A stretch of 64,000 nt of DNA, from assembly GCF_006345805.1 (NCBI RefSeq), contig NC_043008.1, positions 36,208,001 through 36,272,000 of the forward strand, in the 5' to 3' direction. Below the pieces are notes generated by a model that had not been told where the DNA came from, ran no database searches, and worked only from the letters and a program-made list of their open reading frames with translations. Made by a program: the position numbers and the translations under genes. This DNA comes from Octopus sinensis (lineage: Eukaryota). Positions 21,201 through 62,063 of the stretch are shown in pieces (positions within the stretch are counted from its first letter, which is position 1; each line of letters starts with the position of its first letter).

Positions 21201-24200
21201 AGCAGTGTCATTCATTTCTAATATCCAGTGGAAGCATGTCTGGCCATGGTATCAAATTATGGTACAAGGCCAGTAATTTCAGGGAAAGGGTCTAGTTGAT
21301 CACATTGGCCCCGGTGTCCAACTGGTATTTGTGTTATTGACCCCAAAAGGATGAACGGCAAAGTCAACCTCGGTGGCATTTGAACTCCGAATGTAAGATC
21401 AGAAGTTCAGAAGAAATACTGCAAAGCATTTTTTCTGGTGTGGCAATGATTCTGCCAGCTGACTACCTTAAGGCTATAGGTAAATATTACCTTATATGGA
21501 AATATTACCTTATATGGAAACAGGTGAAGGTTGGTGACAGGGTAGGCATCTAGCTGTAGAAAATCTACTTCAATAAACCGGTCCATACATGGAAAAGTGA
21601 ACATTAAAATAATTATAATGATGCATGCCTGTATATATGCTTGTATGCATACATACAAGCTTGTTTGTCTGTTTCTTTTAATTATTTCACTCCTACCAAT
21701 AAAGAAGGAACTGGTTTATAGCAAAGAAACAAGGTTCCATTCTTGGAATTTAGATTGCAAAAAACAATGTCTTACATGTTGAATCTTGTATATTTTTATT
21801 GGTTTTGCTTACAAGATTTTATTTAAAAAGTGCCTGTTAGTTGGTCAATTTTTTTGCTTGAAAATTCTAGATTTTTGACCTGGTTATGTGAACATCTATT
21901 AAAATAGCCAAGTGTGCCAATAATTGCTGGTATAAATGACAATTTATAACCTGGGTAGAGAATCTGTTGGTGTTGAAGCAATTGTACATATACTCTTTCT
22001 CACTGATTTTGGAAGTAATGTTCATATCTGCAGTGCAGCTACCCTCTATGATTGTACATATATATATATATATGTATATAAAGCTGAAGTTGTCTGTGTA
22101 TGGCAGGTTTGGTAGCCTTCAACTAACACTATCTCCTCCGAGACCCTGTGGCGCAAGTTGACCAAAATTGAGAGTATGATAGAAGAAGGCTTGCTCTTCC
22201 TTCCTTAGAAGGAAAAATTCAAATTGGACCATGTTAACACCAAAAATTATTTACATCAAAAAGGTGCTTTTTTCTATGAAAATCCCTATTTTTTAGGATT
22301 TTTTGACTGCTGTGTTGCCATTTTTTGGTGTATTTCAACCAGAAAAATGTTCACTTAAAGAGAATAACAAGCTACATAATGCAAAATTTTTACTTTTAAA
22401 AAATTCCAATTCTAAAGGGTCGAAAAGAAAACAAGCCTGAGCAATGCTGGGATATACTGCTAGTATATATATATGTTTATGTATATGTGTGTGTGTGTGT
22501 GTGGAAAAGGTAGACCCAAGGAGACATGGGGAAATATGATCTTTAGTTTTTGTATCTCATGGAGTCAATGACAATTGACTGAGACTTCTGACCATTTGCT
22601 GTGCTTGAGAAGACAGGTCAAGCTAAGGGAAATCGTGTTCATGGCCATTGGTGCTGTTGCCTAAGAAGCACTCATACCAGTGATATGTAACAGGCACCCA
22701 GTACACTGTCTAGAGTGGTCGGCATTAGGAAGAGCATCCAGCTGTAGAAATCAAGCCAAAACAGACTTCGGAACCTGATGCAGCTCTCTGGCTGACCGGT
22801 TCCAGTCAAACCATCTAATCCCATGCCAACATGGAAAATGGACATTAAGTGACGATGATGATGAAGATATGTTTGTATATGTATAGATCTACATAAGTAC
22901 CTCATACATGGTGATTGTCAACTCATAAACAACTTATGACCATCACTGACTAATTATTTTAGCATTGTCTTTAACATCTAGGCTGTCAGCAATGCCTGTG
23001 CTGAAATTTAAAAGTCAGTAATAGCTTGCACAACACCACTAAGACTCACCTACAAAGCCAAGAAGTCCAGAAAGCCCTTTGGCTTCCTGATGAAGTAGGT
23101 GTTATTTTGGAGGCACACATGCATTATATATATATATATATCCCCCTAACACGAACCCACAACAAACACACTTACACCTGCACACACCCTACACACACTT
23201 TTACCCAGATATTAACACCATGACACACGCAAACATATGGTTCCACACATACACATAATTTGATACGGGTGCAAAACATCCAACACTATTCTTTGGAAAT
23301 GACTGTAAATATTGACTTCACACAAACACGTTGCTTCCCGATACAGGCACAAGGCCAGCAGAACTATAAATATTGAAAATTGTACCCACACACGCACACA
23401 TATATACACGCGCGCGCGCCCCAACATATATATATAAACACACACACACACGCGCACACATACATACATATAGCTCTTCCTGTCCTAAACGAACTTACTT
23501 TTCCAGCTCAAATTCAGTCAAGCGGAAAATACACTCCTTAACTAAAAAGCTATTCAAAATATCCACATGACGTCTACTGACCAGCCTGAACAATAAGAAT
23601 TTTCAACAACGCTATTTTCGAAAACTCCATACACCACCTACACCAACATTCATTCTAAACATTCACATGACCTCTCTACTATGACCACATCCACGTGACC
23701 TCTTTATTATGACCAATAAGAAATTTTAGGCGTGACACCAGCCAAATTTTAACATCTCTGGAGCCTATTTTCTTACCCCAACACCAACTTCCATTCAAAC
23801 ATTCATGTGACCCCTTTATAATGACCAATCAAAATTGTATTGACCATTGTCCACAAGAAATTTTAGGCGCGAAACCAAGCAAATCTTAAGCAACTCTGGA
23901 GCCTCTTTTTTCACATATAAGAGACAGCAAACCCAACATAAAGTCAGATAAGAGAAAAAAATCAATCAGAAAGGAACTCTATCTCACTCAAAATATCTTT
24001 TGATAAGCATAGCAAATGCGCAACCGGTAAACTCTTACTTTTTTTATTCTACACTGAAATCTGACATTGAACTTTTCCACCAAAAACTGTATATTACACG
24101 CTTTTACTAAATATCTTATTCTGAAACAGAACACTGTAAAAGACTCTTACTTTTTTTCTTATACACTGAAATCATTCACAAAAAATGAACATTGTATTCT

Positions 24201-24607: not shown

Positions 24608-25085
24608 TATTTAAAAGCAGCAGAAATATAACAATATTTTTGACCTGGTTATGTAAACATCTATTGTTATATTTCTGCTGCTTTTAAATAACGCATATTA
24701 CTCTACCTCTGGTATTTGAGTACTCTTTTTTTCCACCTTGTTTCACATTTATGTACTTACTCCAGTGTATATATATATATGTACACACCTCCATACATGC
24801 ATATATGAATGCATACCAGCATGGCTGAGTGAGCAGTGTATCGGGCTGTGAGATTGCTAGTTTTAATATATTGTCACTTGTGCATTACATAACCTCTGTA
24901 GTTAAAAAATTTAAGTCTTAATTAGTCCAGTCCACATAGCTATGTGGACTGGACTAGGTATCACTGGTTAGAAACAACTCACTCCTTTCAACATTGGCAC
25001 TCACAAATACTAATGTTATTAGTATTATTAATGCAATTCTATAAAGCAGAATAGTGTGTCTCATCTGAAGTCCAATACTATAATG

Positions 25086-25122
<37 letters not shown>

Positions 25123-25850
25123 CAATAATAATAATGATAATTTAGGTGTAGGGGTGGCTGTATGGTAAGTAGCTTGCTTACGAATCACATGGTTCTGGGT
25201 TCAGTCCCACTGCGTGGCACCTTGGGCAGGTGTCTTCTACTATAGCCTCGGGCCGACCAAAACCTTGTGAGTGGATTTGGTAGACGGAAACTGAAAGAAG
25301 CCCATCGTATATATCTATATATATATATTATATATATATATATATATATAATATATATATATATATACACATTATTTAAAAGCAGCAGAAATATAACAAT
25401 ATTTTTGACCTGGTTATGTAAACATCTATTGTTATATTTCTGCTGCTTTTAAATAACGCATATTACTCTACCTCTGGTATTTGAGTACTCTTTTTTTCCA
25501 CCTTGTTTCACATTTATGTACTTACTCCAGTGTATATATATATATGTACACACCTCCATACATGCATATATGAATGCATACCAGCATGGCTGAGTGAGCA
25601 GTGTATCGGGCTGTGAGATTGCTAGTTTTAATATATTGTCACTTGTGCATTACATAACCTCTGTAGTTAAAAAATTTAAGTCTTAATTAGTCCAGTCCAC
25701 ATAGCTATGTGGACTGGACTAGGTATCACTGGTTAGAAACAACTCACTCCTTTCAACATTGGCACTCACAAATACTAATGTTATTAGTATTATTAATGCA
25801 ATTCTATAAAGCAGAATAGTGTGTCTCATCTGAAGTCCAATACTATAATG

Positions 25851-25884
<34 letters not shown>

Positions 25885-26075
25885 CAATAATAATAATGAT
25901 AATTTAGGTGTAGGGGTGGCTGTATGGTAAGTAGCTTGCTTACGAATCACATGGTTCTGGGTTCAGTCCCACTGCGTGGCACCTTGGGCAGGTGTCTTCT
26001 ACTATAGCCTCGGGCCGACCAAAACCTTGTGAGTGGATTTGGTAGACGGAAACTGAAAGAAGCCCATCGTATATA

Positions 26076-26132
<57 letters not shown>

Positions 26133-26920
26133 ATATGTTTGTGTGTCTGTGTTTGTCCCCACAACATCACTTGACAACCGATGCTGGTGTGTTTACGTCC
26201 CTGTAACTAAGCGGTTCGGCAAAAGAGTCTGATAGAATAAGTACTAGGCTTACAAAGCCTAACTCTAAGTCTTGGGGTCGATTTGCTCGACTAAAGGCGG
26301 TGCTCCAGCATGGTCACAGTCAAACGACTGAAACAAGTAAAAGAGTAAAGAGTAAAGGGTATAACAATCCTTCAAGGCACAAGGCTTGAAAATTGGGGCA
26401 GGGGGATAGTCAGTTACATCAACTTCAGCTGGTACTTATTATATCGACCCTGAAAGGTTGAAAGGCCAAAGTTCATGAAGAATTTAGCAAAGATTTTACC
26501 GGTTTACAAAATTATTGTCAGAGATGTTGATTAAAGCTTGTTTACATGTCTTTATGATCCCCAGATTTTAGTTTACTCATGTTTTCTTTTTTTTTAAATT
26601 TTAAATTCAATTTTTGTTTCTGTCTTAGATTTTATACGAAGATAATGTGGATGAAAAAGAGAAAATACAGTTGCTAACTTTACTTCAAGAATATGGAGGA
26701 CTTGGATTGGAATTATCCAGGTAAAACGTTTTTTTTTAGCTTAGAAAATTTTAGAATTATTCTTTTGTATATCAGTATTTAATCATTTGCTTCCCAGTCA
26801 CAGGGTTTCCAGTTCGGTCCCATTGTGTGGCACTTTGGACAAGTGTCTTCTACTACAGCTCCATGCTGACCAAAGCCTTTTGTGTGGATTTGGTAGACGG
26901 AAACTGAAAGAAGCCAATCA

Positions 26921-26956
<36 letters not shown>

Positions 26957-29900
26957 AGTGTGTGAGTGTATGAGTGAGTGAGTGTGCGTGTGTGTGTGTG
27001 TGTGAGTGTATGAGTGTGTGAGTGTGCGTGTGTGTGAGTGTATGAGTGTGTGTGTGTGTGAGTGTATGAGTGTGTGAGTGTGCGTGTGTGTGTGTTTGTG
27101 AGTATGAGTGTGTGTGTGTGTGTACATGTGCTTGTGTGTCCGTGTCCTTGTTTTAACAGTGCACAATAGTTGTAAAGAGGTGTCACTGTTAAAAAAAAAA
27201 AAGGAGCACTTCGTCGGTTACGACGACGAGGGTCCCAGCTGATACGATCAATGGAACAGCTTGCTCGTGAAATTAACGTGCAAGTGACTGAGCAATCCAC
27301 AGACACGTGTACCCCTTACGTAGTTCTCGGGGAGATTCAGCGTGACACAGAACATGACAAGGCTGGCCCTTTGAAATACAGGTACAACTCATTTTTGCCA
27401 GCTGAGTAGACTGGAGCAATGTGAAATAAAGTGTCTTGCTCAAGGACACAACATGTCACCAGGAACTGAACTCATGACCTTACAATCGTGAGCCGAATGC
27501 CCTAACCACTAAGCCACACGCCTTCACGGTATCACTGTTATACAAGCAGTGACATTATCTTTTGCGAAAATATGTCCAACCCATGAGAAAATATTATCTT
27601 GCATGGAAACAGGTGAGGCTTGGTGACTGAAAGAGCATCTAGCCATAGAAAATCAGCCTCAATAAGCCTTGTCTACTCAATGCTAGCATGAAAAGGTAGA
27701 ACTTAATAAACGATAATGAGGATTATCATTCGCCTGTGTTCAAGTTGGCAGCTTAAATTATCAAAGCAGCTTCTCTGTAGTGTTACGTAACATCATAAAA
27801 TTGAAATTTACACAGTTTGATATCAATCTCTCTTTCTCTCTCTCTCTCTCTTTCTGTCTTGTATTTCAGTGTGGATCAAATTATCACGTCTTTGGTGGAT
27901 ATCTGCAGTCAATATCTTAATCAAGTTCCGAAATCCAGTTTTCTTTCACAGCTTATCATAACAGCAACATCCTTAACGCTGCAGTTTAACCTGGTGGTAA
28001 GTATTATCTGTTTGTCGGCCCTTGTGCTTGATAAAAACTGTTTCTACTTCTTTACATTTTGAGTTCAAATCCTACCAGGGTCACCTTTACCTTTCGAGAC
28101 CCAATATAATAAAATACATTCATGTATTGGTGTTGATGTAATTGACTAATTTCCTTCCACTAAAATTGCTGACCTTGTGACACGGATGATGATGATGATT
28201 AATGACTATGATGATTGATGATGATGATGGTGATTGGTAGAATCATCTGTTGTTTTATGCAAGCACTGAGATCATTGATGAGGACACACAACTAACATAC
28301 TAATTATATTCTGACATGCAATTTTTCACCAAAAAGGACAACACCCAGCACTTTGGAAATAATATCCCAAAGCATTTGTTCTATCAATAATCTCTTTGTT
28401 GTTTGCATTCTTCCTTCATTCTTCCTTCCATCATATATATGCAACCAAGCCTTTCCATTTTTTGTTACTTTGCTTGATCAGTTTCCTAAATGTCTTGTTT
28501 GTTATATCAGAAATTACTGAAGCTTGGAAGCTCATACTTGTTTATCTATTACTAAATGAAATAGAAAAAGATGAAAAGAAAAAAAATTTAAGTAAAAATA
28601 TTCTTTCTCAAATTTTATTTTTAGAAAGTTAATATAAATTTTAGATTTCGTTTTTGGATTTGGTTTGCAAGATTCTTTATATGTGTTCGTGTGTTGAAGC
28701 ATATTCTATTGTGTCTGGGGAAAGTAATTTTCTTTTTGTGCCTTATTATGTAACACACTTTTCAATAGTTTTAACTAGTCAAAACTATTCAAAAGGTTGC
28801 AAGATGCAACGAAAATTTTAGGACAATAAAAATAAGAAAAACGTGGAAATTTTACTGGTATGTGTGTTACATAATAAGGTACAAAAAGAAAATGACTCTC
28901 CCCAGACACAATAGAATAAATTTTAGAGTTATCTCCCTTACATTTCGTAAACAACAACAAAAAATCATTAACTTAGCAGTTTTTTTCTCCTTGTCACGAA
29001 GGTAATTGACTGGGTTGGGGTGGGGCCAGTTGGCAGAAGGTCATTAAGTTGACTGTGGAGGCTGTAGAGGTTGCCTCAAAGTGGCTGTGAGTCAGAGGTA
29101 GCCAGCCCTGGAAGGAGTACTGCTAACTGGACACCTCTGGGTCACTGAGAAGGTGAGGATGTGTGGGTATCTGATGTTGAAAAACCTGAAACACCTAATG
29201 ACCTTAGGAAACATCACTGATGATGGTGTATGGTGTGTGGAAAAACTTTGTTAAGCATTTTAAGTGAGACCTTAGTCCTGGCTGATGTCAGTGTCAGGTC
29301 AATGGCACCCTTGCTGGTGGCACGTAAAAAACACCCACTCCACTCTCAGAGTGATTGGCATTAGGAAGAGCATCCAGCTATAGAAACCTTGCCAAATTAG
29401 ATCAGAACTTGGTGCAGCCCCCTGGCTTACTAGTTTTCAGTCAAACCATCCAACCCATGCCAGCATGGAAACCGGGTGTCAAATTATGATGATGATGATG
29501 TTCCTTTTTGTGCAAAAAGCATTCCTGGGTAATTCTTTCTCTCTCTAGCCGTTATATTTAAATCTGTATTTCTCAAACATTTTTGTCACATGCTCCACTT
29601 TGATTTTCCAAAAAAGACATCTACCCATCACCTTAAATGGACAAAATTACTATGTGGCATATATGATAGGTATAACACCTGTTTCTGCCCTCATTCATCA
29701 TCACTCTCTCTCTCTCCCCTCTTGCTTTTCCCTCTGGCAAGGTAACCAAGTGTCTCCTTTACAGCAGCACACCTGTTTCTGTCCTCTTTCTTGTTACCTC
29801 TCTCTCTCTCTGTCTTTGTCGGTCTGTCTGTGTGTTTGTCTCTCTCTCTCTCTGGCCAGATACCCGTGTACCTTGTCTATAGCAAGACACCTACCTCTAC

Positions 29901-30508: not shown

Positions 30509-31624
30509 ATATACATATGTGATGATGATGATGATGATTTAAAATGAGTTTTAACTAAAATTTTATTACAAGCTTTATTCCCTTGTTACATATTTACATT
30601 ATTCTGAAGTTAACGTATGCCCTTACCAAATATTGCCATGCCCCATCAAATAGAGTGTGTGCCCCTCCATGAGGAACACAATTTAGATATATATTGGATG
30701 AATTATAGGTTGTATAAAAAAAAACAAAATCAGTTATGGGAACAATGAATTGAAACAGAAACATGTTGATGTTTGCATTTCCATACCAACACAGCTTCAT
30801 TGAGATATTGGTGGTTATAATAATCATTTCATATTTTGGTACAAGGCAAGCAATTTTTGAGGAGTTGAGAAGTCAATGACATCGACCCCAGTACCCAACT
30901 AATACTTATATTATCAACTCTGAAAATGTGAAAGGCAAGGTTGCCTCCAGTGGAACTTGAACTTAGAGCATAGACAATCAAAAGAGGATAATGGTTCCTA
31001 TCCTTTCCAGATATATAAAAGCAGTATTGTTCAACAAGGAGCAGATATAAGTTTGTATACATCGCCTTCCATGCCAAACATTTCTCTTGGACGACCTCCA
31101 ACCTCTACTGAAAGTAGCTGCAACAGCAGCCCTTCATCAGGTATGACTGATGCTGATGTCCGTGCCATGAATGCTGCCAGGTATAACCTGCCATTGACCA
31201 GTCATATATTACCAAATACTTTACCATATTACCCATCACGCCATGTTATTGATGTTATTCGTCTGGTGTGCTAATGATTCTGCCAGCTTGCTGTGTTTTT
31301 GGTGTCTGTGATCTTGCATATTTTACCTTTTTCAGTCATTGCACTGTGACCATGCTGGGGCATCATCTTAAATGTTTTTATCAAACAAATCGATCCCAGT
31401 ACTTATTTTTTAAAGTTTGCTATTTATTTTATTAAACCGTTTTAGTTTCCATCTGCCAAATCCACCCGCAAGGCTTTCGTTAAGCTAAGGCTGTAGTAGA
31501 AGAGACATTTACCCAAGCACATCAAATGTTTCTTGTTTTTAGTTTCACCATAATATTTCTCATGAAACTTTGCAAAAACCTATCTATTTATTTATTTATT
31601 TTTGTTTGTTTTTTGTTTGTTTGT

Positions 31625-31659
<35 letters not shown>

Positions 31660-34059
31660 TCTATTCATTCTTCTTCAAAATTTCCATTTCCAGAAAAATG
31701 ACTTGCATATCTGTGATATGCTGATAGATTTATTGTTGCCTCTTGTGAAGAAAGTAGATGATACCAGTAATCTACAGCTTCGGGGTATAGCTTGTTGCTG
31801 TTTGGAAGAAATGGAGTGTTTTTGCCCTGTAAGTAATCCAAAGACAATTCCATATACTCTCTAGATGTTTTTTTTCTTTTTTAATTCTACTTCCAAATGT
31901 GTCTTCGATACAAATTAACATTACACCTGCAACCAACTGTACTCAATTTGTTTCCCTCCAATGTTTAGGGATCTTCTCCATTCATTATCCAATTATCACT
32001 ACCTTGTTTTATCATGCTCATTGCTTTTTGTATCCATGCTGGATGCTCTTCTAGTTGTTATTCATGCATTAAAACTAATGAAACTGCTGAGCTGTTGGCT
32101 GTAGTGTTTATGGAAGGCGTAAGCATAATATCAGCATTGCACAGGTGTTGCCGATTCAATGACATATGAAAATAAACACTCTGCACACATAAATACAACA
32201 TGCACACTCACACTCACATGTGTGTGCACATACATACAGGTCATAAACATCTTTTATTCTTTTTTTGTATATGTCTAATTATCTTGTTCTGCTGGAGACA
32301 AATTAGATCAGTTGCTGTGCTCTGAGACAATGATGCCTTTTTTTGACAAAACCTGCATCCACAGCTTCCCTCTTGTCTCCAGACAATCAGGCTGCCTTTT
32401 CTTTATTGATATATCATCACTTTTGAAGAATCTTGAGATTATATTTCCTTCTCATGAATTGCTACCAGCCAATTGCTCTACCTTCTCTGGAGGTAGTTTT
32501 ATATATATACGAGCAAAATGCGCCCCATCCAATAGACGTTGCTTAGTTGTCAAACATTTAAACCAAATTTTCTCAAAACAACTTGTCTGACCGTCCCATT
32601 GGCCTCCCCTTTGAGAAACACTGATTTAACCTAAATTTGAGACACCAAACAGGCCAGCTTTTTTTGCGCAAACTGCACGTGCATTTTTCTTGCGTACTTG
32701 CACGTACAAATGTACGTTCCCACGGCTTTATCGATCGGATTCTCACCTGGAATCGATTTTTGTAATTTTTTCAAGACTTATACATGCCCTGATACCGTTG
32801 GTATCTACATATCAAATTTGAGCGCAATTGGATGGAGGATGCCTGAGATCCTAGAAGACATACATACAGACAGACAGAATGGATTTTATATAATAGATAT
32901 ATATATATATACACACACATATATATGTATGTATAAAATAAATAAAAAATGAAATATGGAAAGCTTTTAACAATGCAGAAAGTTTTAGAAAAAAATAAAG
33001 TTGGAGAGTTGCTGTTGTTGCTAACCCAAATAAAAAGTCATTTAAAATCTACTAAATCCACTCACAAGGTTTGGGTTGGGTTGAATTGGTTTGAGGCTGT
33101 AGTAAAAGACACTCTACCCAAGGTATTGTACACTGGGACTGAACCCAAAACCATGTGGCTGGGAACCAAATTTCTTTGCCAAACACCAAAGGGTTAACTC
33201 ATTTATGACAAAAATTAACTCATTTAAAGCAAATCTGGTGAGATATTTAGAATGAGATTACCAAAAATTGTAGATTTATTTTGCTTTGTTTATATTTGTT
33301 TCCCAGGGACTTTTGAAGAAATATTTAACCCCCATCTTGAAAACAGCCCAGCTGGAGTCAACTTATATGTATCAAGACATTGTTTGCCTTCTGTCACGGA
33401 TAATTCACCACATCACAACAAAGTAACTATGGTTTATTGTTTTTTTATCTTTTATCTTTTACTTGTTTCAGTCGTTGGACTGGGGCACCACCTTGAAGGA
33501 TTTAGTTAGAACGAATCAATGCTAGTACTTATTCTTTAAAGTCTGGTACTTTAAAGTGAAGGGGAACATAAACAAACCAATGTCTATTGTCAAATGGTGG
33601 TGGGGGGGATGAACATGAAGACAAAGACTCACACACACATAGATACACACACACACACACACACACACAACAGGCTCCTTTCCGTTTCCATTTATCAAAT
33701 CTGCTCACAAGGCTATGGTTGGCCCAGGGTTATAGTAGAAAAGACTTTCCCAATGTGCCACGCAGTGGAACTGAACCCAAAACCAAAGCAAAAAAATGCT
33801 ATCATAATTTATTATTGTTGTTAATAAGGCAGTGGATTGTCAGAATCATTAGAAAGTTTGGCCAAAATACCTCTTGGTATTTCTTTTGGTTCTTCACATT
33901 CTGAGTTCAAAGCCTACCAAAAGCAGCTTTGCCTTACATCATCAGTCCAGGGTTGACATAAAAGTACTGAGGTTGATTTAATCGATAAATTCACTCAATC
34001 CAAAACTTCTGGCCTTGTGCCTGTGTTAAAAACAACAACAGCAACAACAGCTGCTGCCG

Positions 34060-36405: not shown

Positions 36406-39400
36406 TGAGAAGAAGAAGAAGAAGAAGAAAAAGACCAATGCAGTTTAATTTATTTGAAATGAGCATCACATGAGTTAGCTTGTTTGTTACATTTCTATTG
36501 AAATACATTGCTTTTGTTTCAATTAATTTTGAAAATAATGAAGAATTAGGTAAAATAATTTCTACATTAATTAAGCTGCTGGTGTTTGGAACTTAAATTA
36601 ATTAGAAATTTTGGTACATCTGACCTCATTTATAACTGATTCATTCATCACTGATCCAGGGTAACATAGTACACCAGTTGTGATTTGTGTTATGCTTATG
36701 AGTGAAGGAGTGTGGCTTAGGGGTTAGGGATGTTTGGCTCATAATCGTAAGGTCATGAGTTCAATACCTGGCAGTGTATTGTGACCTTGAGCAAGACCCT
36801 TTATTTCATGTTGCTCCAGTCCACTCTGCTAACAAAAACGAGTTGTATCTGTCATTCAAAAGGGCCTAACCTTGTCACATTCCGTTTCATGCCGAATCTT
36901 CCGGAGAACTACGTTAAGAGTATGCATGTCTATGGGGTGATCAGCCACTTGCACATTTGATTTTATGAGTGGGCTGTTCCATTAATTGGATCAACTGGAA
37001 CAGTCATTGTCATAACCAATGGAATGCCAGCTATGCTTATCATGGGTTGGCAATCAGTCAAAGATTCTGCTTGGACTGCAAAAGCACACCTCAATGACCA
37101 TCCACACTGCTTCGTACAACTTGAGATCTTGGCATAAAACCTATTTTTCCTGCATGTGCTATTATGCATCTATCACTGATTCATTTAACATGGTTCAGTT
37201 TTTGGAACCAAACACCCTTGATAAATGAAGATAGATATATCTTAATTCAGATCACTTCAGAATAGGAACTGTTTCTTGGAGATTTAGGAGTGGTCTCAGT
37301 TGTGCTGCTGTTGAAAGATGTCAACCCTTTTGTTACTGTATTTATTTTGAGATGTTCTTTGTTTCTTTCAATTACTTTAAATGTAACAAAGAATTTAGTA
37401 AAATAACTTAGTTATCATTAAGCTTGTGTTAGGAGCATAAATTGTGTTTAAGGTTTGGTGGAAGATTTTAATTCAAAACTTATGAAAACAAGACATTTGT
37501 ACTCAGAGCTAGAGCTGGTTTCAGCCAGGTTGGTAACGAAAGGGTTAAATAGTAAATTTCTTGTTGCTTGAATTGCTCAGTGGAATCTCTTGTAAGTAAC
37601 CCCCAGAAATATTTCATCCTTTTCTAACCATAGTTTTCAATGTAACTCACCTAGTGTTTTGATAAATTCTGAAAATAATCAAAAATTTTGAGGGGTTTAG
37701 TAAAATAACTAATTTTTTTGTAATTTAAATGATGTTTAGAATCAAACTTAAGAAAAGCTTTTTATTTTATATCATAAAACATATACATTTTATTAAATAC
37801 CCTTTAATAGAGACTGTTTTGTACAATAAAATCAGTGGTATTTCTGGGTAGGTTGATATCAGAAGGGTTAAAATGTGTACTCCCCATTAGATAAACAGGA
37901 AATTTTTATGTAGTTACCAAATTTTCTTCATAGAGCTCTGTTTTGTATTTAAAATGGTAACAACATAAGGCAAAGGGAGAGCCTCTACATTTTCACTTCA
38001 CCAGCTCTCCTTCTCTCTCTGCCTGTCTGTCTCTCTTGCTCTCCCTCCACCTCTTTTTCTCACTCATGCAAATGTTAAATATCTTAACCCAGACATTGCT
38101 ATAACACAAGAGACAATATTTAAAAGACCCGCTTTCCAGTTTGGTTGTACTTTGGCACCCCTTGTCATCTCAGTAAACTGTAATGTTTAGGATTTTATTG
38201 ACTCTACTTAAATGTCTGTTTAATCCACTTTAATTACAAGAATCCCTTTGTTGCAAAAGTGTTGCATTTCTGAAAATCTTTCTGTAACATGTAGCTTCAT
38301 AACATGAAACCTATTTATCTCTGACCTCCTTGTAACATGGATGTCAAAGGGAGAAGAAAAAAAAATGTTTCATATTATGCACCGTCGTGTTTTAGAGAGA
38401 TTTTCATGAATGCAATATTTCTGTAATTTGTGAAAATACATGTAGTTAAATCAAAGAATTATTTGGAACAGTGAATCTTGAAGCATATGAAACTATAAAT
38501 AATGACCTGTAAATATTGGATTGAAAAACCATTTTGGATGGAAAGCCTTTGACTTTTTCTACCCCAAAAGTTTTTTCAACTCAATATATACATGCTGTTA
38601 TTCATAGTTTCATGTGCTTCAAGATTCTCTATTCCAAAAAAGAATTATTTCTAATTCTTTTGAAAGTTTATTAATTCTTAAGAGCTCAAATTATATTCTA
38701 CTTTATTGTATTCATAACACTTTTCTGGCATTAAAACATATTTTCTTTTCTTTCATATTTCAATGCAGCCTCCAAGTCCTGATGAACAATCGTTGTTGAA
38801 CATGGAGGTGAAGCAGTTTGTGTCTCTAGTCATGGATAACTACATCCCTTTCACCCCAGCATGTTTGTGGACATTAATAGACACCATTGTAACTATTGTG
38901 AAGTCTGACTGGGAAACTCCGCCCTCTGTAAGTTCACTCCTCCCTTTACACTGGTGGGGTTTGGGGTAGAGCTCATTATTTTCTCTCCATTTTATTGTTT
39001 ATTTATCAATCCATTACCATTCTTAGTGAACCATTATACTTTAATTTATTAACTCCAGAGATGTGTTATTTATTTAGATATGCTAATTATTCATATATAA
39101 TATTATACTTCTACTCAGTGATCCTCTCAGCTCTTCTATACTGAGGAGGTCTAATAAACACAAAACATACACCATACTTGCCAAATAGATTGAAATATTA
39201 GTTAATCAGTTTATGTTGTCTTTTCTTCACCAAATAAGTATTTCTTATTAATAATTAATTATGATAGAAGCAGTATTAATACCAGAAGACAACCTTTATC
39301 TTCCACTTAACACGGATGTTGTGTTTGAACACTGAATATTGCATTATTTATCTTGAGAGGATTTTTCATAAGGATTTGTGGTTCTGCTCATTGCATTAAA

Positions 39401-45400: not shown

Positions 45401-46140
45401 GTGTATGGGTGTATGGGTGCAGGCATGGGTGTATGGGTGCAAGCATGGGTGTATGAATGCAGGCATAGGTGTATGGGTGCAGGCATGGGTGTATGGGTGC
45501 TAGCATGGGTGTATGCGTGCAGACATGGGTGTATGGATGCAAGCATGCATGTATGGTCACAGAGTTAGCTTTACAGCCATGTGACTTCAGGTTCGACCAT
45601 GTTGCAGGAGGCACAATGAATCCATTTGTGTTACAAACATTGTCTAAAGAAAAAAAAAATGTTCCCTGATGACAAAGACACCTTTAATCAGATATTCACA
45701 TTCAAATCTGTCAGAACATTCTGAGAGTAAACAAATACATCATCATAATTTGAGGGTAGATTTAACTACTATTATTTTGGTTTTTACAAATCATTGAAAT
45801 AGACTTTCTTTAGATTGTAGCCTAGGCTGTTGTGCATGTGTAACTGCGAAATTCAATCAGCACAATTGAATTTGGTTAAATAGATTTTGGGTAAATGTCA
45901 CTTAAACCATTTCTCTTTCCAGATGGAATTTCCCCGCCAAATCTTGTTGAATTCAGAAGAGGTTCTTCTTCATAAACGTTTTGTTATGGCATCCTTGCAT
46001 CCTGCTCATAGTGTATTACATCGGCATCTGATGTTATCATGCTTGGCTGATTATATTGAATATAACGAGGTATGTTCCCTATATATATGTCTTCAGGTTG
46101 TCTATTTAATGAGTGCGCGCGCACACACACACACACACAC

Positions 46141-58781: not shown

Positions 58782-60457
58782 CTGATTTGTTCATTTCTCC
58801 TCTCGTTATATGATCGACCTTCGATCGCCATCTTGAAACCTGTTTCCTTTAATACACTTCCGCCTTCTCCAAAAATCCCTCTTCCGGACAACTTTTACTT
58901 AGAAGGCAACCCACAACATGTGCTCTCTCTCTCTCATTCATCTACCTCATCTACCAGCTATATAATCCCGTGCACAGATAAGTTTGAATGCCTATTTTCA
59001 CTCCTAGACTGATCATACATGTTTCTCTATCTATCTAACTATTTTATCTGATTTCTATCTATTTTGTCTGATTTGTTCATTTCTCCTCTCGTTATATGAT
59101 CGACCTTCGTGTATCGCGGTGCACCCGCCCTGCCCACCCCCACCCCCACCACCAATACCGGATATCTCTATTTTTGCTCCATCTATACCGGATGTCGCTT
59201 CTCCCACCACCATTATAGGTGTCTACTCTTCGAACCCCCCTCTTCAATACGCTATTTTACCATGCATTACCCCTCTCTTGATATCCTACGTTCTACTTGC
59301 CTACAACCTGTCATCATTTCTCTGAACCACCCCTACCCACTGGTGCTCCCCATTATTCCTGCCCCCCCCCACATAAAATGCACCATCCGAACGTGGCCGA
59401 TGCCAGACCCCTCTGGCACCTGTGCAGGTGGCACGTAAAAAGCACCCACTACACTCGCGGAGTGGTTGGCATTAGGAAGGGCATCCAGCTGTAGAAACAC
59501 TGCCAGACCAGACTGGAGCCTGGGGCAGTCCCTAGCTCCCCAGACCCCGGTCGAAACCGTCCAACCCGTGCTAGCGCGGAAAACGGACGTTAAACGATGA
59601 TGATGATGATGATGATGATATATATATATATAAATATGTGACCGCGTGTGTACCGTTGGCGATTTTTTTTCCTCTGTCTTTCCTTCTCTGGATCTTTCCT
59701 TCTCCTATGTTTCCAACGAAGAGCTCCGCTCGAAACGTTAAACCCTCCTTCTTTCCTTCTTTCCTGAGCGTCCAATAATACTATATTTGTTCCACGTCCT
59801 CGCGTTGTTGTGTTTTTTGTGCTTTCTTGTTTGGATTAACTATATATATATATATATATATATGTACATACACACACACACACATACATGACAGGTTTTC
59901 ACATAGTTTCTGTCTACCAAATTCATTCACAGGACATTGGTAGCAGAAGACACTTGCTCAATGTGCTGAGCTGTGGGACTGAAGCCCAAAACCACTTAAC
60001 CACATATAGCTGTAGCAATTTGAATTCATTAAAAACGTCTAACAATGCTTCCTCTACAATATGTAATATGATATTAATCAATAAAAAATATGTAACATTA
60101 TGATTTGATATTTGTATTGCAGGCAACCGTTCGTTTCCTGCACATCAGTGTGCTGCATTCGTTAGCGAATGACAAACTGTCGTGGTCGTTAGCAACGGCA
60201 GTTCTAGAAGTGTGCAGAAACATCCTCTTGCATCACAACACACAGACTATATTCACAGGTAAGGGTTTTGTCTTTTTGTTTTATCTTTTTTACCTTTCAC
60301 TTGTTGCAGTCGTTGCACTGTGACCATACTGGAGCACTGCCATGAATGGTTTAGTCAGATGCTTGGTGCCTTTTGTGTCGGTCCCTTTTGTTGAACTGCC
60401 GAGGTTATGGGGACACAAACAAACTAACACTGGTTGTCAAGTGGTGGTGTAGGGACA

Positions 60458-60498
<41 letters not shown>

Positions 60499-61938
60499 TA
60501 GCATCTTCACGTATTGGTAAAAAACACAGAAAAGAAGAACCATCACACTATTGTTTATTTAAACCTTGTATTAAAGATACCATCTGGACAAATCTGTAAT
60601 TGAATGCATTCCTCCTCCTCATCATCATTGTTTAACATCTGCTTTCCATGCTGGCATGGATTAGATGGTTTGATTGAGGACTGGTAAGCCAGGAAGTTGC
60701 ACCAGACCCCAATCTAATCCAGCAAGGTTTCTACAGCTGGATGCCCTTCCTAACGCCAACCACTCTGAGAGTGTAGTGGGTGCTTTTTACATGCCACCAG
60801 CATGAAGACTTGTCAGTCAGTGCTGGCATCAAGCACGCTCGAATACCACCATTATTACAAGATGTTTTGTTTTCTAGGGAGACTCTTTTATCAGGTTTAC
60901 ACTTAATGATTTTGGGATGTTGGACCATAGAAGCCTGAAGAATATATATATATATATATATATATATAGAAGCCTGAAGAATATATCTTACACTTCATTA
61001 TTTACTCAGATTAACTGAGTCAAAGGATGTGGTGGTGGTGGTGGGGCACTAAGTGGTGGATTGATCTGCTAGAAATAACAAATATATTTCTTTATCACCT
61101 TCAATATATCTGGATAGAATGGATGCTGGCTTAGCTGTGTGGTCAAGAAGTTTGTTTCATTACTCTGTGGTTTTAGGTTCAGTCCCACTGCATAGGGAGC
61201 TGGGCATATGTTTTCTACTTTAAGCTTTAAGTTGACCATAACATTACATATGAAATTTGGTAGATGGAAACTGTGTGGAAGGAAGCTCATTGGAGGGACA
61301 TCTGTTATAGGTTGGCAGGGTTAATCTGCTTTTAGCAGAGACTCCAATCTCATTGCAAGCAATCAGACCCAGCCACAAATCTTGGAGGCTTTGAAAAGAA
61401 TCATGGATGCTACCATTCCTTCTCTTATCAGGCCATTTATATATATGCCCCAGCATGGCCACAGCCTTAGGGCTGAAACATGTAAAAGAATAAAAGAAAA
61501 ATATACACTCTCTCTTTACTCTCTTTTACTTGTTTCAGTCATTTGACTGTGGCCATGCTGGAGCACCGCCTTTAGTCGAGCAAATCGACCCCCCAGGACT
61601 TATTCTTTGGAAGCCTAGTACTTATTCTATCGGTCTCTTTTGCCGAACTGCTAAGTGACGGAGACGTAAACACACCGGCATCGGTTGTCAAGCAATGCTA
61701 GTAGGACTGATTTTTACATAAATTCAATAAATAAAGCTTTTGAACCTAATTCTTGTGTTTACAAATCATGTCTTATTTTTAATCTTTATTTTTAATGTAA
61801 TGTTTTTTTTCTATTTTTCTTTCTTTTACAGAAATTGACAGTTTTTTACATCTTCTAATGACCAGTTCCAAAGATGTTGACATCATAGACAGAGCTACTT
61901 TCTACTATTCCTTATTGAATGGTGCTGCTGATACCAAG
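16025..61938 (+). CDS. AP5B1: AP-5 complex subunit beta-1, multi-exon gene, 3' end beyond the window (about 596 codons assembled)
   Basis: Exons chain with GT-AG sites. Phases are consistent throughout once a 3n+1 exon (tentatively 34339-34393) is placed after exon 5. Peptides match human AP5B1 as recalled: YFALDIIRILYEDNVDEKEKIQLLTLLQEY ~ DLGRDLLSDLRSEKLSEQTKVSLLALSMEY; QLRGIACCCLEEMECFCPGLL ~ PLQATACECLRELESCKPGLL; EEVLLHKRFVMASLHPA ~ DEALLLRRLTLAAQHPA; DVDIIDRATFYYSLL ~ DPDGRDHARLYYILL. Confidence 0.92.
17881..18180 (-). mobile_element. tRNA-derived SINE, same family as 2094-2395
   Basis: Reverse complement matches 2094-2395 along nearly its full length; flanked by (TA)/(CA) repeats. Confidence 0.85.
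22070..22463 (+). mobile_element. Non-autonomous Helitron
   Basis: 5' (TA)n-tataaagctgaagttgtctgtg; 3' cctgagcaatgctggg subterminal hairpin followed by CTAG|T. The same 3' terminus occurs alone at 9863-9891. Confidence 0.7.
24601..26130. repeat. Tandem duplication of a ~765-bp unit (about 24601-25366 and 25367-26130)
   Basis: The copies look identical apart from microsatellite length (one AAT unit); both junctions lie in (AT)n tracts. Confidence 0.95.
26629..26720 (+). CDS. AP5B1: AP5B1 exon 2 (ILYEDNVDEKEKIQLLTLLQEYGGLGLELS+AG)
   Basis: Acceptor tttttgtttctgtcttag, donor CAG|gtaaaa, 92 nt, phase 0 to 2. Confidence 0.9.
27870..27996 (+). CDS. AP5B1: AP5B1 exon 3 (VDQIITSLVDICSQYLNQVPKSSFLSQLIITATSLTLQFNLV)
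   Basis: (CT)n tract then tttcag acceptor, donor GTG|gtaagt, 127 nt, phase 2 to 0. Confidence 0.92.
30976..31254 (+). pseudogene. HDAC4: Class IIa histone deacetylase (HDAC4/5/7/9-type) N-terminal regulatory-region fragment inserted in a SINE
   Basis: Stop-free frame QSKEDNGSYPFQIYKSSIVQQGADISLYTSPSMPNISLGRPPTS...LPLTSHILPNTLPYYPS. The core matches the class IIa HDAC motif LYTSPSLPNITLG as recalled. No other HDAC exons were seen in the window. Confidence 0.75.
31694..31828 (+). CDS. AP5B1: AP5B1 exon 4 (KNDLHICDMLIDLLLPLVKKVDDTSNLQLRGIACCCLEEMECFCP)
   Basis: Acceptor tttccatttccag, donor CCT|gtaagt, 135 nt. Contains the conserved AC.CL.E.E..P motif. Confidence 0.95.
32508..32900 (-). mobile_element. 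Non-autonomous Helitron (second family)
   Basis: The reverse strand begins tctattatataaaatccattctgtctgtctg and ends ...gcattttgCTCG|T (degenerate CTAG). Confidence 0.6.
33307..33422 (+). CDS. AP5B1: AP5B1 exon 5 (GLLKKYLTPILKTAQLESTYMYQDIVCLLSRIIHHITT+AA)
   Basis: Acceptor ttgtttcccag, donor AA|gtaact, 116 nt. Continues the CP-GLL motif. Confidence 0.88.
34339..34393 (+). CDS. AP5B1: Tentative small AP5B1 exon 6 (A+QNVFESKETKHSRHSTDE)
   Basis: Acceptor ttgctttgtttcag and a weak donor GAG|gttgat. Its 55-nt (3n+1) length exactly reconciles phase 2 after exon 5 with phase 0 before 38769. It falls in a poorly conserved linker. Confidence 0.5.
35183..35430 (+). mobile_element. 5'-truncated R4/Dong-like RLE LINE 3' end inside an (AAT)n tract
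   Basis: KIVLM*TAHILRKILSM* resembles the terminal LLGTARILRKVL of R4/Dong ORFs. A 3'UTR follows, and (AAT)n flanks both sides. Confidence 0.75.
37325..37544. mobile_element. piggyBac-like MITE
   Basis: TIRs CCCTTT(T/C)GTTAC with flanking TCAA / TTAA. A second, more degenerate ...AGAAGGG|TTAA element ends near 37868. Confidence 0.7.
38769..38927 (+). CDS. AP5B1: AP5B1 exon (PPSPDEQSLLNMEVKQFVSLVMDNYIPFTPACLWTLIDTIVTIVKSDWETPPS)
   Basis: Acceptor tttcaatgcag, donor TCT|gtaagt, 159 nt. Similar to human SPEEARELRAAVIQLLDTSYLLTP...PPA. Confidence 0.9.
39600..40830 (+). mobile_element. Two tandem RTE-clade LINE 3' fragments (RT C-terminus; about 39600-40330 and 40330-40830)
   Basis: RIGWAKFRKLLPLL, ERNEA(S/N)(M/I)(I/L).W, RERRLHWY.H and ETCGRGKPRK motifs in broken frames. 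Confidence 0.85.
41672..41746 (+). CDS. AP5B1: AP5B1 exon (IFKSLALQYMSTFDASLFLMVVYLK)
   Basis: Acceptor tatttttccag, donor AAG|gtttgt, 75 nt. Similar to human LFKPQLVRLLGTAQLTLLHAMLALK. Confidence 0.88.
42740..43090. repeat. Degenerate GGAATGAT-rich minisatellite
   Basis: Repeated ggaatgat / aggaatcaccagatcat units. Confidence 0.7.
44400..45545. repeat. 20-bp minisatellite CATGGGTGTATGGGTGCA(A/G)G, about 55 units
   Basis: Directly visible 20-nt periodicity. The unit has no stop in any frame, which explains the many overlapping ORFs. Confidence 0.95.
45923..46069 (+). CDS. AP5B1: AP5B1 exon (MEFPRQILLNSEEVLLHKRFVMASLHPAHSVLHRHLMLSCLADYIEYNE)
   Basis: Acceptor ttctctttccag, donor GAG|gtatgt, 147 nt. 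Confidence 0.93.
46290..47420 (+). mobile_element. RTE-clade LINE remnant (RT)
   Basis: LYVDDLALIA, FCYVGGQISTGGESMESVIARIRIG and GRGRPRKTWNKV, with frameshifts. Confidence 0.85.
48751..48904 (+). CDS. AP5B1: AP5B1 exon (REQCKYSVMNSVPVIASKQIADLNPTAFDDISIQLKKVLILNKCLPPALDS+G)
   Basis: T-rich tract then attacag acceptor, donor G|gtaaga, 154 nt, phase 0 to 1. Confidence 0.9.
49205..50012 (-). mobile_element. Duplicated R4/Dong-like restriction-like endonuclease fragment
   Basis: HWKLCQLYGITIEKRWYRH (via a frameshift), ENEKVTILWDMPIHTDREIKANRPDIVV and EKHSKYKDLEIEI give the PD-(D/E)xK-type RPD...K..KY signature. Confidence 0.88.
49264..50112. repeat. Tandem duplication of a ~425-bp unit (49264-49685 and 49686-50112) including an AP5B1 acceptor and the first 71 nt of exon
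   Basis: By-eye alignment gives about 23 substitutions and 3 indels in the LINE/intron part and none in the last ~80 nt. Confidence 0.95.
50042..50189 (+). CDS. AP5B1: AP5B1 exon (NSFLLNNLQSMKKLAQSTDDPHAAVSLYCALFHFYCRHHTSKLGTNIQ)
   Basis: Acceptor ttacttccag, donor AA|gtaagc, 148 nt, phase 1 to 2, linking both neighbours in frame. Confidence 0.9.
50870..51250 (-). mobile_element. Penelope-like element 3' remnant with degenerate hammerhead-like motif
   Basis: LLQSLKAIKSR-type GIY-YIG tail followed by ttttCTGATGA...GAAAgtctcaaaatc. Confidence 0.45.
52318..52407 (+). CDS. AP5B1: AP5B1 exon (LMLELVCSNSKFIPYTLDFLMQVEKDVPD)
   Basis: Acceptor tttctttcaatag, donor AG|gtgagt, 90 nt. Similar to human LAQLYQARPMLAPHFVDLLDQV. 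Confidence 0.9.
53887..54330 (-). mobile_element. CR1-clade LINE 3' end
   Basis: LSYEERLKTLDLYSLEKRRRCGDLILAHNI...GLRGHSEKL...AFSVRVADPWNKLP, then AATAAA and an (ATTGA)n tail. Confidence 0.9.
54330..56700 (-). mobile_element. Old LINE-like remnants (two related segments, about 54660-54960 and 56400-56650)
   Basis: The two segments resemble each other and give CR1/L2-like broken peptides; the clade is uncertain. Confidence 0.4.
57259..57397 (+). CDS. AP5B1: AP5B1 exon (SIYLYLLEELQKMVTSTDMVTITEDLLYNYLDVLKMTANDERISPL)
   Basis: Acceptor ttcttataactccag, donor TTG|gtaaga, 139 nt, phase 2 to 0. Confidence 0.9.
58038..58145. repeat. 108-bp fold-back palindrome (53-bp arms, 2-nt loop, 1 mismatch)
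   Basis: aaaaacttctttggaggattgggatgcatg...gttttgttt-ga-aaacaaaac...catgcatcccaatcctccaaagaagttttt. Confidence 0.95.
59635..59845 (+). mobile_element. Penelope-like terminal repeat with mutated hammerhead core
   Basis: gttt-CCAACGA-a-gagc-tcc-gctc-GAAAC-GTT-aaac at 59709-59743. It ends in (TA)n; upstream 58160-59395 looks like associated degenerate element sequence. Confidence 0.55.
60123..60258 (+). CDS. AP5B1: AP5B1 exon (ATVRFLHISVLHSLANDKLSWSLATAVLEVCRNILLHHNTQTIFT+G)
   Basis: Acceptor tttgtattgcag, donor G|gtaagg, 136 nt. Similar to human ATLNFL...WDLQQGLLRVCRALL. Confidence 0.93.
61832..61938 (+). CDS. AP5B1: AP5B1 exon (EIDSFLHLLMTSSKDVDIIDRATFYYSLLNGAADTK), last one visible
   Basis: Acceptor ttttcttttacag, donor AAG|gtgaga, 107 nt. 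Contains the D..DRA.FYY.LL motif typical of beta-type adaptin trunks. Confidence 0.93.
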
Positions 61939-62063
61939 GTGAGAGTGGTGGTGGCGGTGGGGTGGAATTAGAGCTCCTTTTGTTGTTTTTTGAGGCTCAA
62001 ATTTTGAAGCTAATCCAGCTTTAAATGACATGAAACATTTTTCACTTAGGGTATGTTTTGCTT

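What the first reader, a model, noticed from the sequence alone, without database searches (positions are those of the whole stretch)
30976..31254. HDAC4-like coding fragment inserted into the middle of a SINE inside AP5B1 intron 3
Seen: ~93 stop-free codons containing SLYTSPSMPNISLGRP and LPLTSHILPNTLPYYPS. The left flank (30860-30975) is one half of a minus-strand Nin-like SINE ending ...cttgaacttagagcatagac. The right flank (31255-31295, ttattcgtctggtgtgctaatgattctgccagc) is the continuation of the same SINE, with about 20-25 nt missing. No poly(A) or target-site duplication is visible. Established: LYTSPSLPNITLG is a conserved Ser-rich motif in the N-terminal regulatory half of class IIa HDACs. 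Inference: an internal piece of HDAC4 mRNA/cDNA (or genomic exon) was patched into a break in an older SINE, i.e. endonuclease-independent templated insertion rather than classical TPRT. The intact frame suggests it is young or constrained.
Basis: partly seen in the sequence, partly recalled or inferred. Interest (0 to 1): 0.85.

Follow-up and report, generated by a model that had tools for sequence, protein, structure and literature searches.

The report
Spliced HDAC4 cDNA patch inside SINE
A 279-base piece of spliced class IIa histone deacetylase (HDAC4-like) messenger RNA was copied back into DNA and pasted into a break in an old SINE inside an AP5B1 intron; this is a clean example of a known kind of repair scar and is most likely without function.

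Summary
Window 30975-31254 (+) holds an open, HDAC4-like coding stretch, split between the two halves of one minus-strand SINE.

- **Identity:** the stretch aligns over its whole length to the N-terminal regulatory half of proteins that carry a C-terminal Hist_deacetyl domain and are named histone deacetylase 4.
- **Spliced origin:** genomic contigs of related species show the same sequence as separate exons with canonical introns. In the window these exons abut with no intron, at 31109|31110, at 31245|31246, and probably at 30986|30987.
- **Insertion features:** there is no poly(A), no target-site duplication and no other HDAC piece in the window. About 25 nt of SINE is missing, and the insert is antisense to the SINE.

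This fits a class 2 templated sequence insertion: a reverse-transcribed mRNA patch joined into a double-strand break.

The host gene is AP5B1-like (Pfam AP5B1_middle, 66 bits). The intron number was not verified.

The open frame needs no selection: P=0.52 of staying open at 5% divergence.

It is a new member of a known kind, of modest interest.

The parts
30815..30975 (-). Tail-side part of an old tRNA-type SINE (consensus positions 1 to ~104 as written on the + strand); contains the B-box-like AAGTTCAAGTTCC on the minus strand
   Evidence: Matches other copies in the window (20616-20440, 21252-21386, 8583-8486, 14273-14366, 42110-42017, 58034-57964). Alignment A1. 76.5% identity to the consensus over positions 1-98. 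Orientation was read from the intact copy at 14180-14520 minus strand.
30976..30986 (+). Probable last ~11 nt of the HDAC exon upstream of exon A (…CAA TCA AAA GAG = QSKE); the left junction with the SINE lies within 30974-30979
   Evidence: The Babylonia HDAC4-like protein P0009 aligns HAKEEN with QSKEDN. In L004 the sequence directly upstream of exon A is a polypyrimidine tract plus AG, unlike the window. This part is inferred, not proven.
30987..31109 (+). HDAC exon A (41 codons, DNGSYPFQIYKSSIVQQGADISLYTSPSMPNISLGRPPTST)
   Evidence: The same exon in another species is L004 328-441, bounded by ttttcag| and |gtaagt, and encodes DGGSYPFLMYRSMGYPANDLYTSPSMPNISLGRPPSSS.
31110..31245 (+). HDAC exon B (136 nt, ESSCNSSPSSGMTDADVRAMNAARYNLPLTSHILPNTLPYYPSRH + G)
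   Evidence: 129/136 identical to L001 152-287, which is bounded by ttgcag| and |gtatgt.
31246..31254 (+). First 9 nt of HDAC exon C (TTATTGATG, completing V-I-D)
   Evidence: 9/9 identical to the start of the next exon in L001 (position 831, after a 543-nt GT...AG intron). VID/AID follows YYPS.. in many homologues.
31255..31295 (-). Head-side part of the same SINE (consensus ~130-165, with the A-box-like region GCTGGCAGAATCATTAGCAC on the minus strand)
   Evidence: 31262-31288 matches 21434-21460 (92.6%) and 31265-31288 matches 8448-8425.
31694..31829 (+). Context: next exon of the host gene (ccag|…|gtaagt; KNDLHICDMLIDLLLPLVKKVDDTSNLQLRGIACCCLEEMECFCP), 440 nt downstream of the insert and on the same strand
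   Evidence: Sequence. The exon on its own gives only a weak HEAT_EZ hit. Assignment to AP5B1 rests on the colinear downstream exons.
38769..38927 (+). Context: host-gene exon matching the start of Pfam AP5B1_middle (profile 4-45)
60096..61968 (+). Context: two host-gene exons (within 60096-60320 and 61801-61968) matching AP5B1_middle profile 294-329 and 329-366
   Evidence: Concatenated with the exons above they score 66.4 bits, E 3.9e-18, against a cut-off of 24.5.

Best explanation
This is a non-functional repair scar.

**Proposed sequence of events**
1. A germ-line double-strand break occurred in an old, already decayed SINE copy inside an intron of the AP5B1-like gene.
2. An internal ~279-nt piece of reverse-transcribed, fully spliced class IIa HDAC (HDAC4-like) mRNA was used as filler.
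3. End joining sealed the break, with loss of about 25 nt of the SINE.

The insert carries the tail of one exon, two complete exons and the first 9 nt of the next exon. It is antisense to the SINE and in the same sense as AP5B1.

**Shown**
- HDAC identity.
- Exon-exon joins without introns.
- A single SINE is split.
- Poly(A), TSD and any other HDAC sequence are absent.

**Inferred**
- That a break and end joining, rather than LINE endonuclease and target-primed reverse transcription, made the insertion.
- That it happened in place.
- That it has no function.
For: **HDAC identity**
- A full scan gave 24 hits at E<=1e-3.
- The long hits carry a C-terminal Hist_deacetyl domain, and one also carries HDAC4_Gln.
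- Sources name them histone deacetylase 4(-like).
- The insert aligns to their residues ~240-400, between the two domains.

**Spliced origin**
- In L001, exon B is bounded by cag| and |gtatgt, and exon C follows a 543-nt intron. In the window, B abuts 9/9 nt of C.
- In L004, exon A is bounded by cag| and |gtaagt. In the window, the 3' end of A abuts the 5' end of B exactly.

**Target**
- The flanks are colinear parts of one SINE that is contiguous in five other copies.

**Not target-primed reverse transcription**
- No poly(A) and no TSD.
- The 3' end of the insert is internal to the mRNA, far upstream of the catalytic-domain coding region.

**Not a resident gene**
- tblastn with 37 HDAC proteins finds nothing else in the 64 kb.

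**Insert younger than the SINE**
- The insert is 95% identical to an orthologue's exon.
- The SINE flank is 76% identical to its consensus and 67-71% to copies of its own subtype.

**Matches a described class**
- Class 2 templated sequence insertions have no TSD or poly(A), show microdeletion, and include donors that are cDNAs with several spliced exons (PMC5110952).
Against: - The parent gene of the same genome was not available. The exon structure is therefore borrowed from related species (L001-L006), whose identity is unknown.
- The exact left junction, any microhomology and any filler nucleotides cannot be read without the parent mRNA.
- The ~25-nt SINE deletion is inferred from a consensus and could be unrelated to the event.
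- The 5:2 excess of synonymous differences from L001 would also be expected if the insert itself were under purifying selection.
- No reads were available to exclude an assembly artefact.
Confidence: 0.75

Rival explanations
1. DNA-level copy. The fragment was copied or captured from an existing intron-free HDAC copy (a processed pseudogene or retrogene elsewhere in the genome), either as a DNA fragment or by templated repair synthesis. It was not copied directly from mRNA/cDNA.
For: The absence of introns only shows that RNA was involved at some earlier point. Class 2 insertions can also use DNA donors (PMC5110952).
Against: No such intron-free donor is known. The only relative of >=88% identity found in 5.8 billion protein clusters is the intron-containing locus. 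This rival needs one more event than direct cDNA capture.
Confidence: 0.1
2. Ordinary LINE-mediated processed pseudogene (target-primed reverse transcription), later trimmed by deletions at both ends.
For: The insert is intron-free and mRNA-derived. LINE/RT-like remnants occur in the window (ORFs at 40.0-40.8 and 46.2-47.3 kb), although Pfam did not confirm the four of these ORFs (40451-40774, 46381-46557, 46518-46826, 46684-46947) that were tested.
Against: - There is no poly(A), poly(A) signal or TSD.
- The insert ends 9 nt into an internal exon, where the parent sequence (L001) is not A-rich.
- Both flanks resume the same SINE with only ~25 nt missing. Two later deletions would therefore have had to stop almost exactly at the original insertion point.
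Confidence: 0.06
3. Chimeric retrocopy made by reverse-transcriptase template switching (SINE RNA to HDAC mRNA and back to SINE RNA) during SINE retrotransposition, or retrotransposition of a SINE that already carried the insert.
For: SINE sequence lies on both sides of the insert.
Against: - The HDAC sense strand is + and the SINE sense strand is - (for SINE polarity). Template switching gives same-sense chimeras.
- The insert separates the A-box-like region from the B-box-like region by 279 nt, which should disable Pol III transcription of the composite (inference).
- Only one composite copy is present in 64 kb that holds more than 10 copies of the SINE.
Confidence: 0.03
4. Functional sequence: the segment is used as an exon. 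It could be exonized into AP5B1, which is transcribed in the same direction, or expressed in some other way. This would explain the open frame and the excess of synonymous differences.
For: - The frame is open for 116 codons.
- Differences from L001 are 5 synonymous to 2 non-synonymous.
- There is an acceptor-like site tcctatcctttccag|A at 31010/31011 and donor-like sites at 31140, 31180 and 31265 on the host-gene strand. An exon 31011-31265 would be 255 nt and open in the HDAC frame, which would fit the intron phase inferred for the 31694 exon (read as starting on a codon; not verified).
Against: - The open frame is expected by chance for a young insert (P=0.52 at 5% divergence).
- The synonymous excess is explained if L001 is an orthologue of the parent.
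- The acceptor-like site is simply the coding sequence for SYPFQ.
- No protein containing this sequence joined to anything else was found, although this species' proteins seem to be absent from the databases.
Confidence: 0.04
5. Assembly or library artefact (a chimeric read with cDNA contamination).
For: None specific. A 99-100% identical 762-nt tandem duplication at 24800-26090 shows that the assembly may contain questionable spots.
Against: The insert replaces ~25 nt inside one repeat copy and has 7 differences from the nearest relative. Both are typical of a fixed genomic event. Both junctions lie in unique, non-repetitive context on the insert side.
Confidence: 0.02

Closest known systems
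Class 2 templated sequence insertions / TSIPs (Onozawa & Aplan; review PMC5110952, read)
   Same: - A short patch templated from a distant transcribed locus.
- Donors include cDNAs with several spliced exons.
- No TSD, no poly(A) tract or signal.
- A small deletion at the recipient site.
- Interpreted as repair of a double-strand break by end joining.
   Different: These were described in human cells and human germ line. Here the genome is a SINE- and microsatellite-rich invertebrate-type genome (species not identified), and the event is fixed in the assembly. Junction microhomology or filler could not be read.
Endonuclease-independent LINE-1 retrotransposition (Morrish et al. 2002, as summarised in PMC5110952)
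   Same: The insertion lacks a TSD and a poly(A) tract and is proposed to patch a pre-existing break.
   Different: The inserted sequence is a cellular mRNA fragment truncated at both ends, not a LINE. No evidence identifies the reverse transcriptase.
Classical processed pseudogene (LINE-mediated target-primed reverse transcription)
   Same: Intron-free copy of a spliced cellular mRNA at an unrelated locus.
   Different: There is no 3' end of the mRNA, no A-tail and no TSD. Only ~279 nt from the middle of a >3-kb coding region are present.
Capture of reverse-transcribed spliced mRNA at nuclease-induced breaks, and RNA-templated break repair (titles and abstracts seen: PMC12065846, PMC11390984; mouse-zygote CRISPR examples recalled from memory, not checked)
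   Same: Spliced transcript sequence ends up at a DNA break.
   Different: Those are experimental systems, several of which use transcripts of the broken locus itself. Here the donor is an unrelated gene and the event is evolutionary.

Membership tests
Class 2 templated sequence insertion (break-repair patch) | No target-site duplication | tested here: met
   The longest k-mer shared by the 55-nt junction windows that were compared (40 nt of SINE flank plus 15 nt of insert on each side) is 4 nt.
Class 2 templated sequence insertion (break-repair patch) | No poly(A) tract or poly(A) signal at the end of the insert | tested here: met
   The sequence at both junctions was read directly. The insert ends ...CGCCATGTTATTGATG|TTATTCG, with no A/T run and no AATAAA.
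Class 2 templated sequence insertion (break-repair patch) | Insert templated from a distant locus (here a spliced transcript) | tested here: met
   Exons that are separated by introns in L001 and L004 abut in the window. No other HDAC sequence is present in the 64 kb.
Class 2 templated sequence insertion (break-repair patch) | Microdeletion at the recipient site | tested here: met
   SINE consensus positions ~105-130 are absent between the flanks. This is inferred from a consensus, not from an empty allele.
Class 2 templated sequence insertion (break-repair patch) | Microhomology or non-templated nucleotides at the junctions | tested here: inconclusive
   At the right junction, 0-2 nt of overlap is possible. 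The left junction cannot be placed more precisely than 30974-30979 without the parent mRNA.
Class 2 templated sequence insertion (break-repair patch) | Donor locus remains intact in the same genome | not testable with these tools
   No collection holding this eukaryotic genome was available. The protein databases lack this species.
Classical processed pseudogene (target-primed reverse transcription) | 3' end of the mRNA with an A-tail, flanked by a TSD | tested here: not met
   The insert ends 9 nt into an internal exon.
Classical processed pseudogene (target-primed reverse transcription) | Lacks the introns of the parent | tested here: met
Class IIa histone deacetylase (as the source of the sequence) | Homology to the N-terminal regulatory region of proteins with a C-terminal Hist_deacetyl domain (and HDAC4_Gln) | tested here: met
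   For example, the insert aligns to P0010 residues 335-403, between HDAC4_Gln (65-152) and Hist_deacetyl (641-958).
Class IIa histone deacetylase (a functional gene at this locus) | Catalytic-domain exons and the other HDAC exons nearby on the same strand | tested here: not met
   tblastn with 37 proteins finds only 30954-31265.
AP5B1 (host gene) | Colinear exons matching the Pfam AP5B1 domains above the curated cut-off | tested here: met
   AP5B1_middle scores 66.4 bits against a cut-off of 24.5, E 3.9e-18, on four concatenated + strand exons. The single exons match profile positions 4-45, 294-329 and 329-366 in genomic order. The intron number (3) was not tested.
Template-switch chimeric retrocopy | All parts in the same sense orientation, with a common A-tail and TSD | tested here: not met
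   The SINE sense strand is minus and the HDAC sense strand is plus. There is no A-tail or TSD.
   No reference sequence of that domain was at hand. Rfam and ARAGORN gave no match to the SINE. Only the tRNA-type B-box-like motif GAGTTCAAATTCC and an AATAAA-bearing tail were seen.

The most novel reading that the evidence does not exclude
The HDAC4-derived patch has been recruited as a cassette exon of AP5B1. It lies in the sense orientation and has an acceptor-like site at 31010/31011. A 255-nt open reading to a donor-like site at 31265 would fit the intron phase inferred for the next AP5B1 exon (not verified). This would graft the Ser-rich LYTSPSMPNISLG regulatory motif of a class IIa HDAC into an adaptor-complex subunit. 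The 5:2 synonymous excess would then reflect real constraint.
Probability: 0.04. Interest if true: 0.6.

Novelty: new member of a known kind. Interest (0 to 1): 0.33.

Why it matters
- **Clarity of the example:** this is an unusually clean natural case of a break patched with reverse-transcribed, spliced cellular mRNA. It spans two proven exon-exon junctions and one probable one, the recipient sequence is reconstructable because it is a repeat, and none of the hallmarks of LINE-mediated insertion are present.
- **Taxonomic reach:** such class 2 templated insertions are documented mainly in human and mouse. Finding one fixed in an invertebrate-type genome shows that the process operates in that germ line too.
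- **Practical use:** it provides a simple present/absent phylogenetic marker.
- **Limits:** it does not open a new mechanism. Unless the fragment proves to be exonized, it has no functional consequence.

Tried and rejected
- **Real HDAC exon:** the polypyrimidine+AG at 31010 and CAG|GTATGA at 31140 first looked like a genuine exon. This was rejected because 'ttcctatcctttccag' encodes the conserved GSYPF(Q) of exon A (L004), and the GTATGA lies inside exon B of the intron-containing gene too.
- **Pfam on the fragment:** no family matched, so the motif region is not covered by a Pfam model.
- **Word-indexed protein search, first query:** it gave only one relative, P0001.
- **Word-indexed protein search, two AP5B1-exon queries:** both gave nothing, so this species' proteome is evidently not in that collection and the organism could not be named.
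- **PDB search with the AP5B1-like exon:** nothing.
- **Rfam (gathering and E-value modes) and ARAGORN:** no tRNA or SINE-family match for the flanks.
- **Literature search for the SRA run prefix of L001:** it returned an unrelated paper, so the species of L001-L006 stays unknown.
- **Pfam on LINE-like ORFs in the window:** no hits.
- **Template switching:** considered and rejected on strand orientation.
- **Later erosion of a full pseudogene:** considered and rejected because both flanks resume the same SINE almost seamlessly.

Full report
**1. What is in the sequence**

The window is AT-rich (GC 0.31-0.47) and full of microsatellites and SINE copies, as in an invertebrate-type eukaryote genome. 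No RNA family or tRNA is called.

Around the finding, a stop-free run of 116 codons spans 30924-31271 on the + strand. It contains SLYTSPSMPNISLGRP and LPLTSHILPNTLPYYPS. Read from 30976 as given, the translation is out of frame; the frame is the one in which 30978 starts a codon. The open frame alone means little here, because 49 runs of at least 111 codons occur in the window, mostly in repeats.

**2. The sequence is class IIa HDAC**

A full HMMER scan of 1.84 billion representative proteins with 30978-31253 gave 24 hits at E<=1e-3 and 7 at E<=1e-10.
- The long hits (P0002, P0009, P0010, P0017, P0021, P0022) all carry a C-terminal Hist_deacetyl domain, and P0010 also carries HDAC4_Gln.
- Their sources name them histone deacetylase 4 or 4-like, in Babylonia areolata, Bacillus rossius and Galendromus occidentalis.
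- The window fragment aligns from about KEDNGSYPF to SRHVID with residues ~240-400 of these proteins. That is the regulatory region between the Gln-rich domain and the catalytic domain.
- tblastn with all 37 retrieved proteins finds nothing else in the 64 kb, in particular no catalytic-domain exon. The fragment is therefore isolated and not part of a resident HDAC gene.

**3. It derives from spliced RNA**

The only close relative in the 5.8-billion-cluster collection is P0001, an ORF on short genomic contigs from three sequencing runs (L001-L003).

*Exons B and C (L001).*
- L001 shows a canonical exon, ttgtcttgcag|GGAAGTAGC...CGCCATG|gtatgtcac (L001 152-287).
- A 543-nt intron follows, and then the next exon, ttctttgaag|TTATTGATGGGGAATTTCC...
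- The joined reading frame continues as ...YYPSRH-VIDGEFPQNQ....
- Window 31110-31245 is 129/136 identical to that exon.
- It is followed directly by TTATTGATG (31246-31254), which matches the first 9 nt of the next exon 9/9.

*Exon A (L004).*
- A second set of contigs from a more distant species (L004-L006) carries the preceding exon, ttttcag|GATGGAGGC...TCATCATCT|gtaagt. It encodes DGGSYPF...LYTSPSMPNISLGRPPSSS.
- In the window the corresponding exon is 30987-31109. Its last base abuts the first base of exon B.

*Junctions.*
- Two exon-exon junctions (31109|31110 and 31245|31246) are present without introns.
- A third (30986|30987) is probable. The 11-12 nt upstream (CAA TCA AAA GAG, QSKE) resemble the coding sequence of homologues (HAKEEN in P0009) rather than an intron end.

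**4. The target is one old SINE**

- A SINE is present in more than 10 copies in the window. Five of them are contiguous over a 168-nt consensus (8583-8417, 14273-14440, 21294-21468, 42110-41946, 58034-57869).
- The focal copy matches consensus 1-98 at 30870-30967 (76.5%). It resumes at about consensus 130-135 at 31255-31262, with the well-conserved GGTGTGCTAATGATTCTGCCAGC following.
- About 25 nt of consensus is missing.
- Read on the minus strand, intact copies show an A-box-like region, a B-box-like GAGTTCAAATTCC and a tail with AATAAA. The SINE is therefore minus-strand and the HDAC insert is antisense to it.
- The insert separates the A-box-like and B-box-like regions. This makes later Pol III-driven retrotransposition of the composite unlikely (inference), so the event most likely happened in place.

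**5. Hallmarks of the insertion mechanism**

- There is no A- or T-run and no AATAAA at either end.
- The longest k-mer shared by the two flanks is 4 nt.
- The insert is truncated at both ends within the coding region.
- These features, together with the small recipient deletion and a donor consisting of several spliced exons, are the published description of class 2 templated sequence insertions. Those are interpreted as reverse-transcribed RNA patches joined into double-strand breaks (PMC5110952).
- Template switching during SINE retrotransposition is rejected on orientation.
- A conventional processed pseudogene later eroded at both ends is unlikely, because the flanks resume the same SINE almost seamlessly.

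**6. Age and constraint**

- Against L001 exon B there are 7 differences in 136 nt. Five are synonymous third-position changes and two are non-synonymous (G>E, S>C).
- The most economical reading is that L001 is the orthologue in a sister species, so most differences arose between functional genes, and that the insert is young.
- Constraint on the insert itself cannot be excluded without the same-genome parent.
- In a simulation with 5% random substitutions, the 92-codon frame stays open in 52% of cases. The intact frame is therefore not evidence of selection.
- The SINE flank is much more diverged (76% to the consensus, 67-71% to copies of its subtype). This is consistent with insertion into an already old element.

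**7. Host gene**

- On the + strand, exons at 38769-38927, within 60096-60320 and within 61801-61968 match Pfam AP5B1_middle at profile positions 4-45, 294-329 and 329-366, in genomic order.
- Concatenated with the exon at 31694-31829, they score 66.4 bits (cut-off 24.5, E 3.9e-18).
- The exon at 31694-31829 has a canonical acceptor and donor and lies 440 nt downstream of the insert.
- The insert therefore sits in an intron of an AP5B1-like gene, in the sense orientation.
- The intron number was not verified. Homologues of this AP5B1 could not be retrieved.

**8. Function**

The most likely function is none. The insert does contain an acceptor-like site (31010/31011) and donor-like sites on the host strand. 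An exon 31011-31265 would be 255 nt and open. Exonization is thus conceivable, but it is untested and a priori unlikely.

**9. Verdict**

This is a new example of a known kind of event and is of modest interest.

Noticed in passing
window 44427-45556: A 20-nt minisatellite (unit TGTATGGGTGCAGGCATGGG, about 55 copies, 82% matches). It causes the GC and GC-skew peak and a stack of long spurious ORFs on both strands.
   Followed up: partly
window 24800-25328 and 25565-26090: A tandem duplication with a period of 762-765 nt at 99-100% identity. It is either a very recent duplication or an assembly artefact. A third, diverged partial copy lies at 26787-27003.
   Followed up: partly
window 31318-31414: A second SINE-like module lies just right of the interrupted SINE (…CAGTCATTGCACTGTGACCATGCTGGGGCA…). 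It is also present at 20358-20261, 33447-33551, 61524-61608, 15151-15257 and other sites. In the copy at 20240-20650 it sits next to the same tail-side SINE part, so the two modules may form one composite element.
   Followed up: no
window 39.9-40.8 kb and 46.2-47.3 kb (+ strand); 49376-50096 (- strand): Degenerate ORFs share motifs (…SIRCTQCKLWIHK…, …ERRLHWFGHV…), and two adjacent (tandem) ORFs on the minus strand start MDWANFFIDWRLFSRKLLSGSN. They look like decayed retrotransposon coding remnants, but Pfam gave no hit.
   Followed up: partly
L004 442-455 versus window 31110-31121: The first 12 nt of the intron after exon A in L004 (GTAAGTGGCTGC) resemble the start of exon B (GAAAGTAGCTGC in the window, GGAAGTAGCAGC in L001). 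This is probably coincidence and was not pursued.
   Followed up: no
L001 1-55: The contig with the intron-containing HDAC exons starts with a repeat that matches window repeats (29442-29496, 13819-13766 and others) at about 80%. This suggests that the L001 species belongs to the same broad lineage as the window's organism.
   Followed up: no
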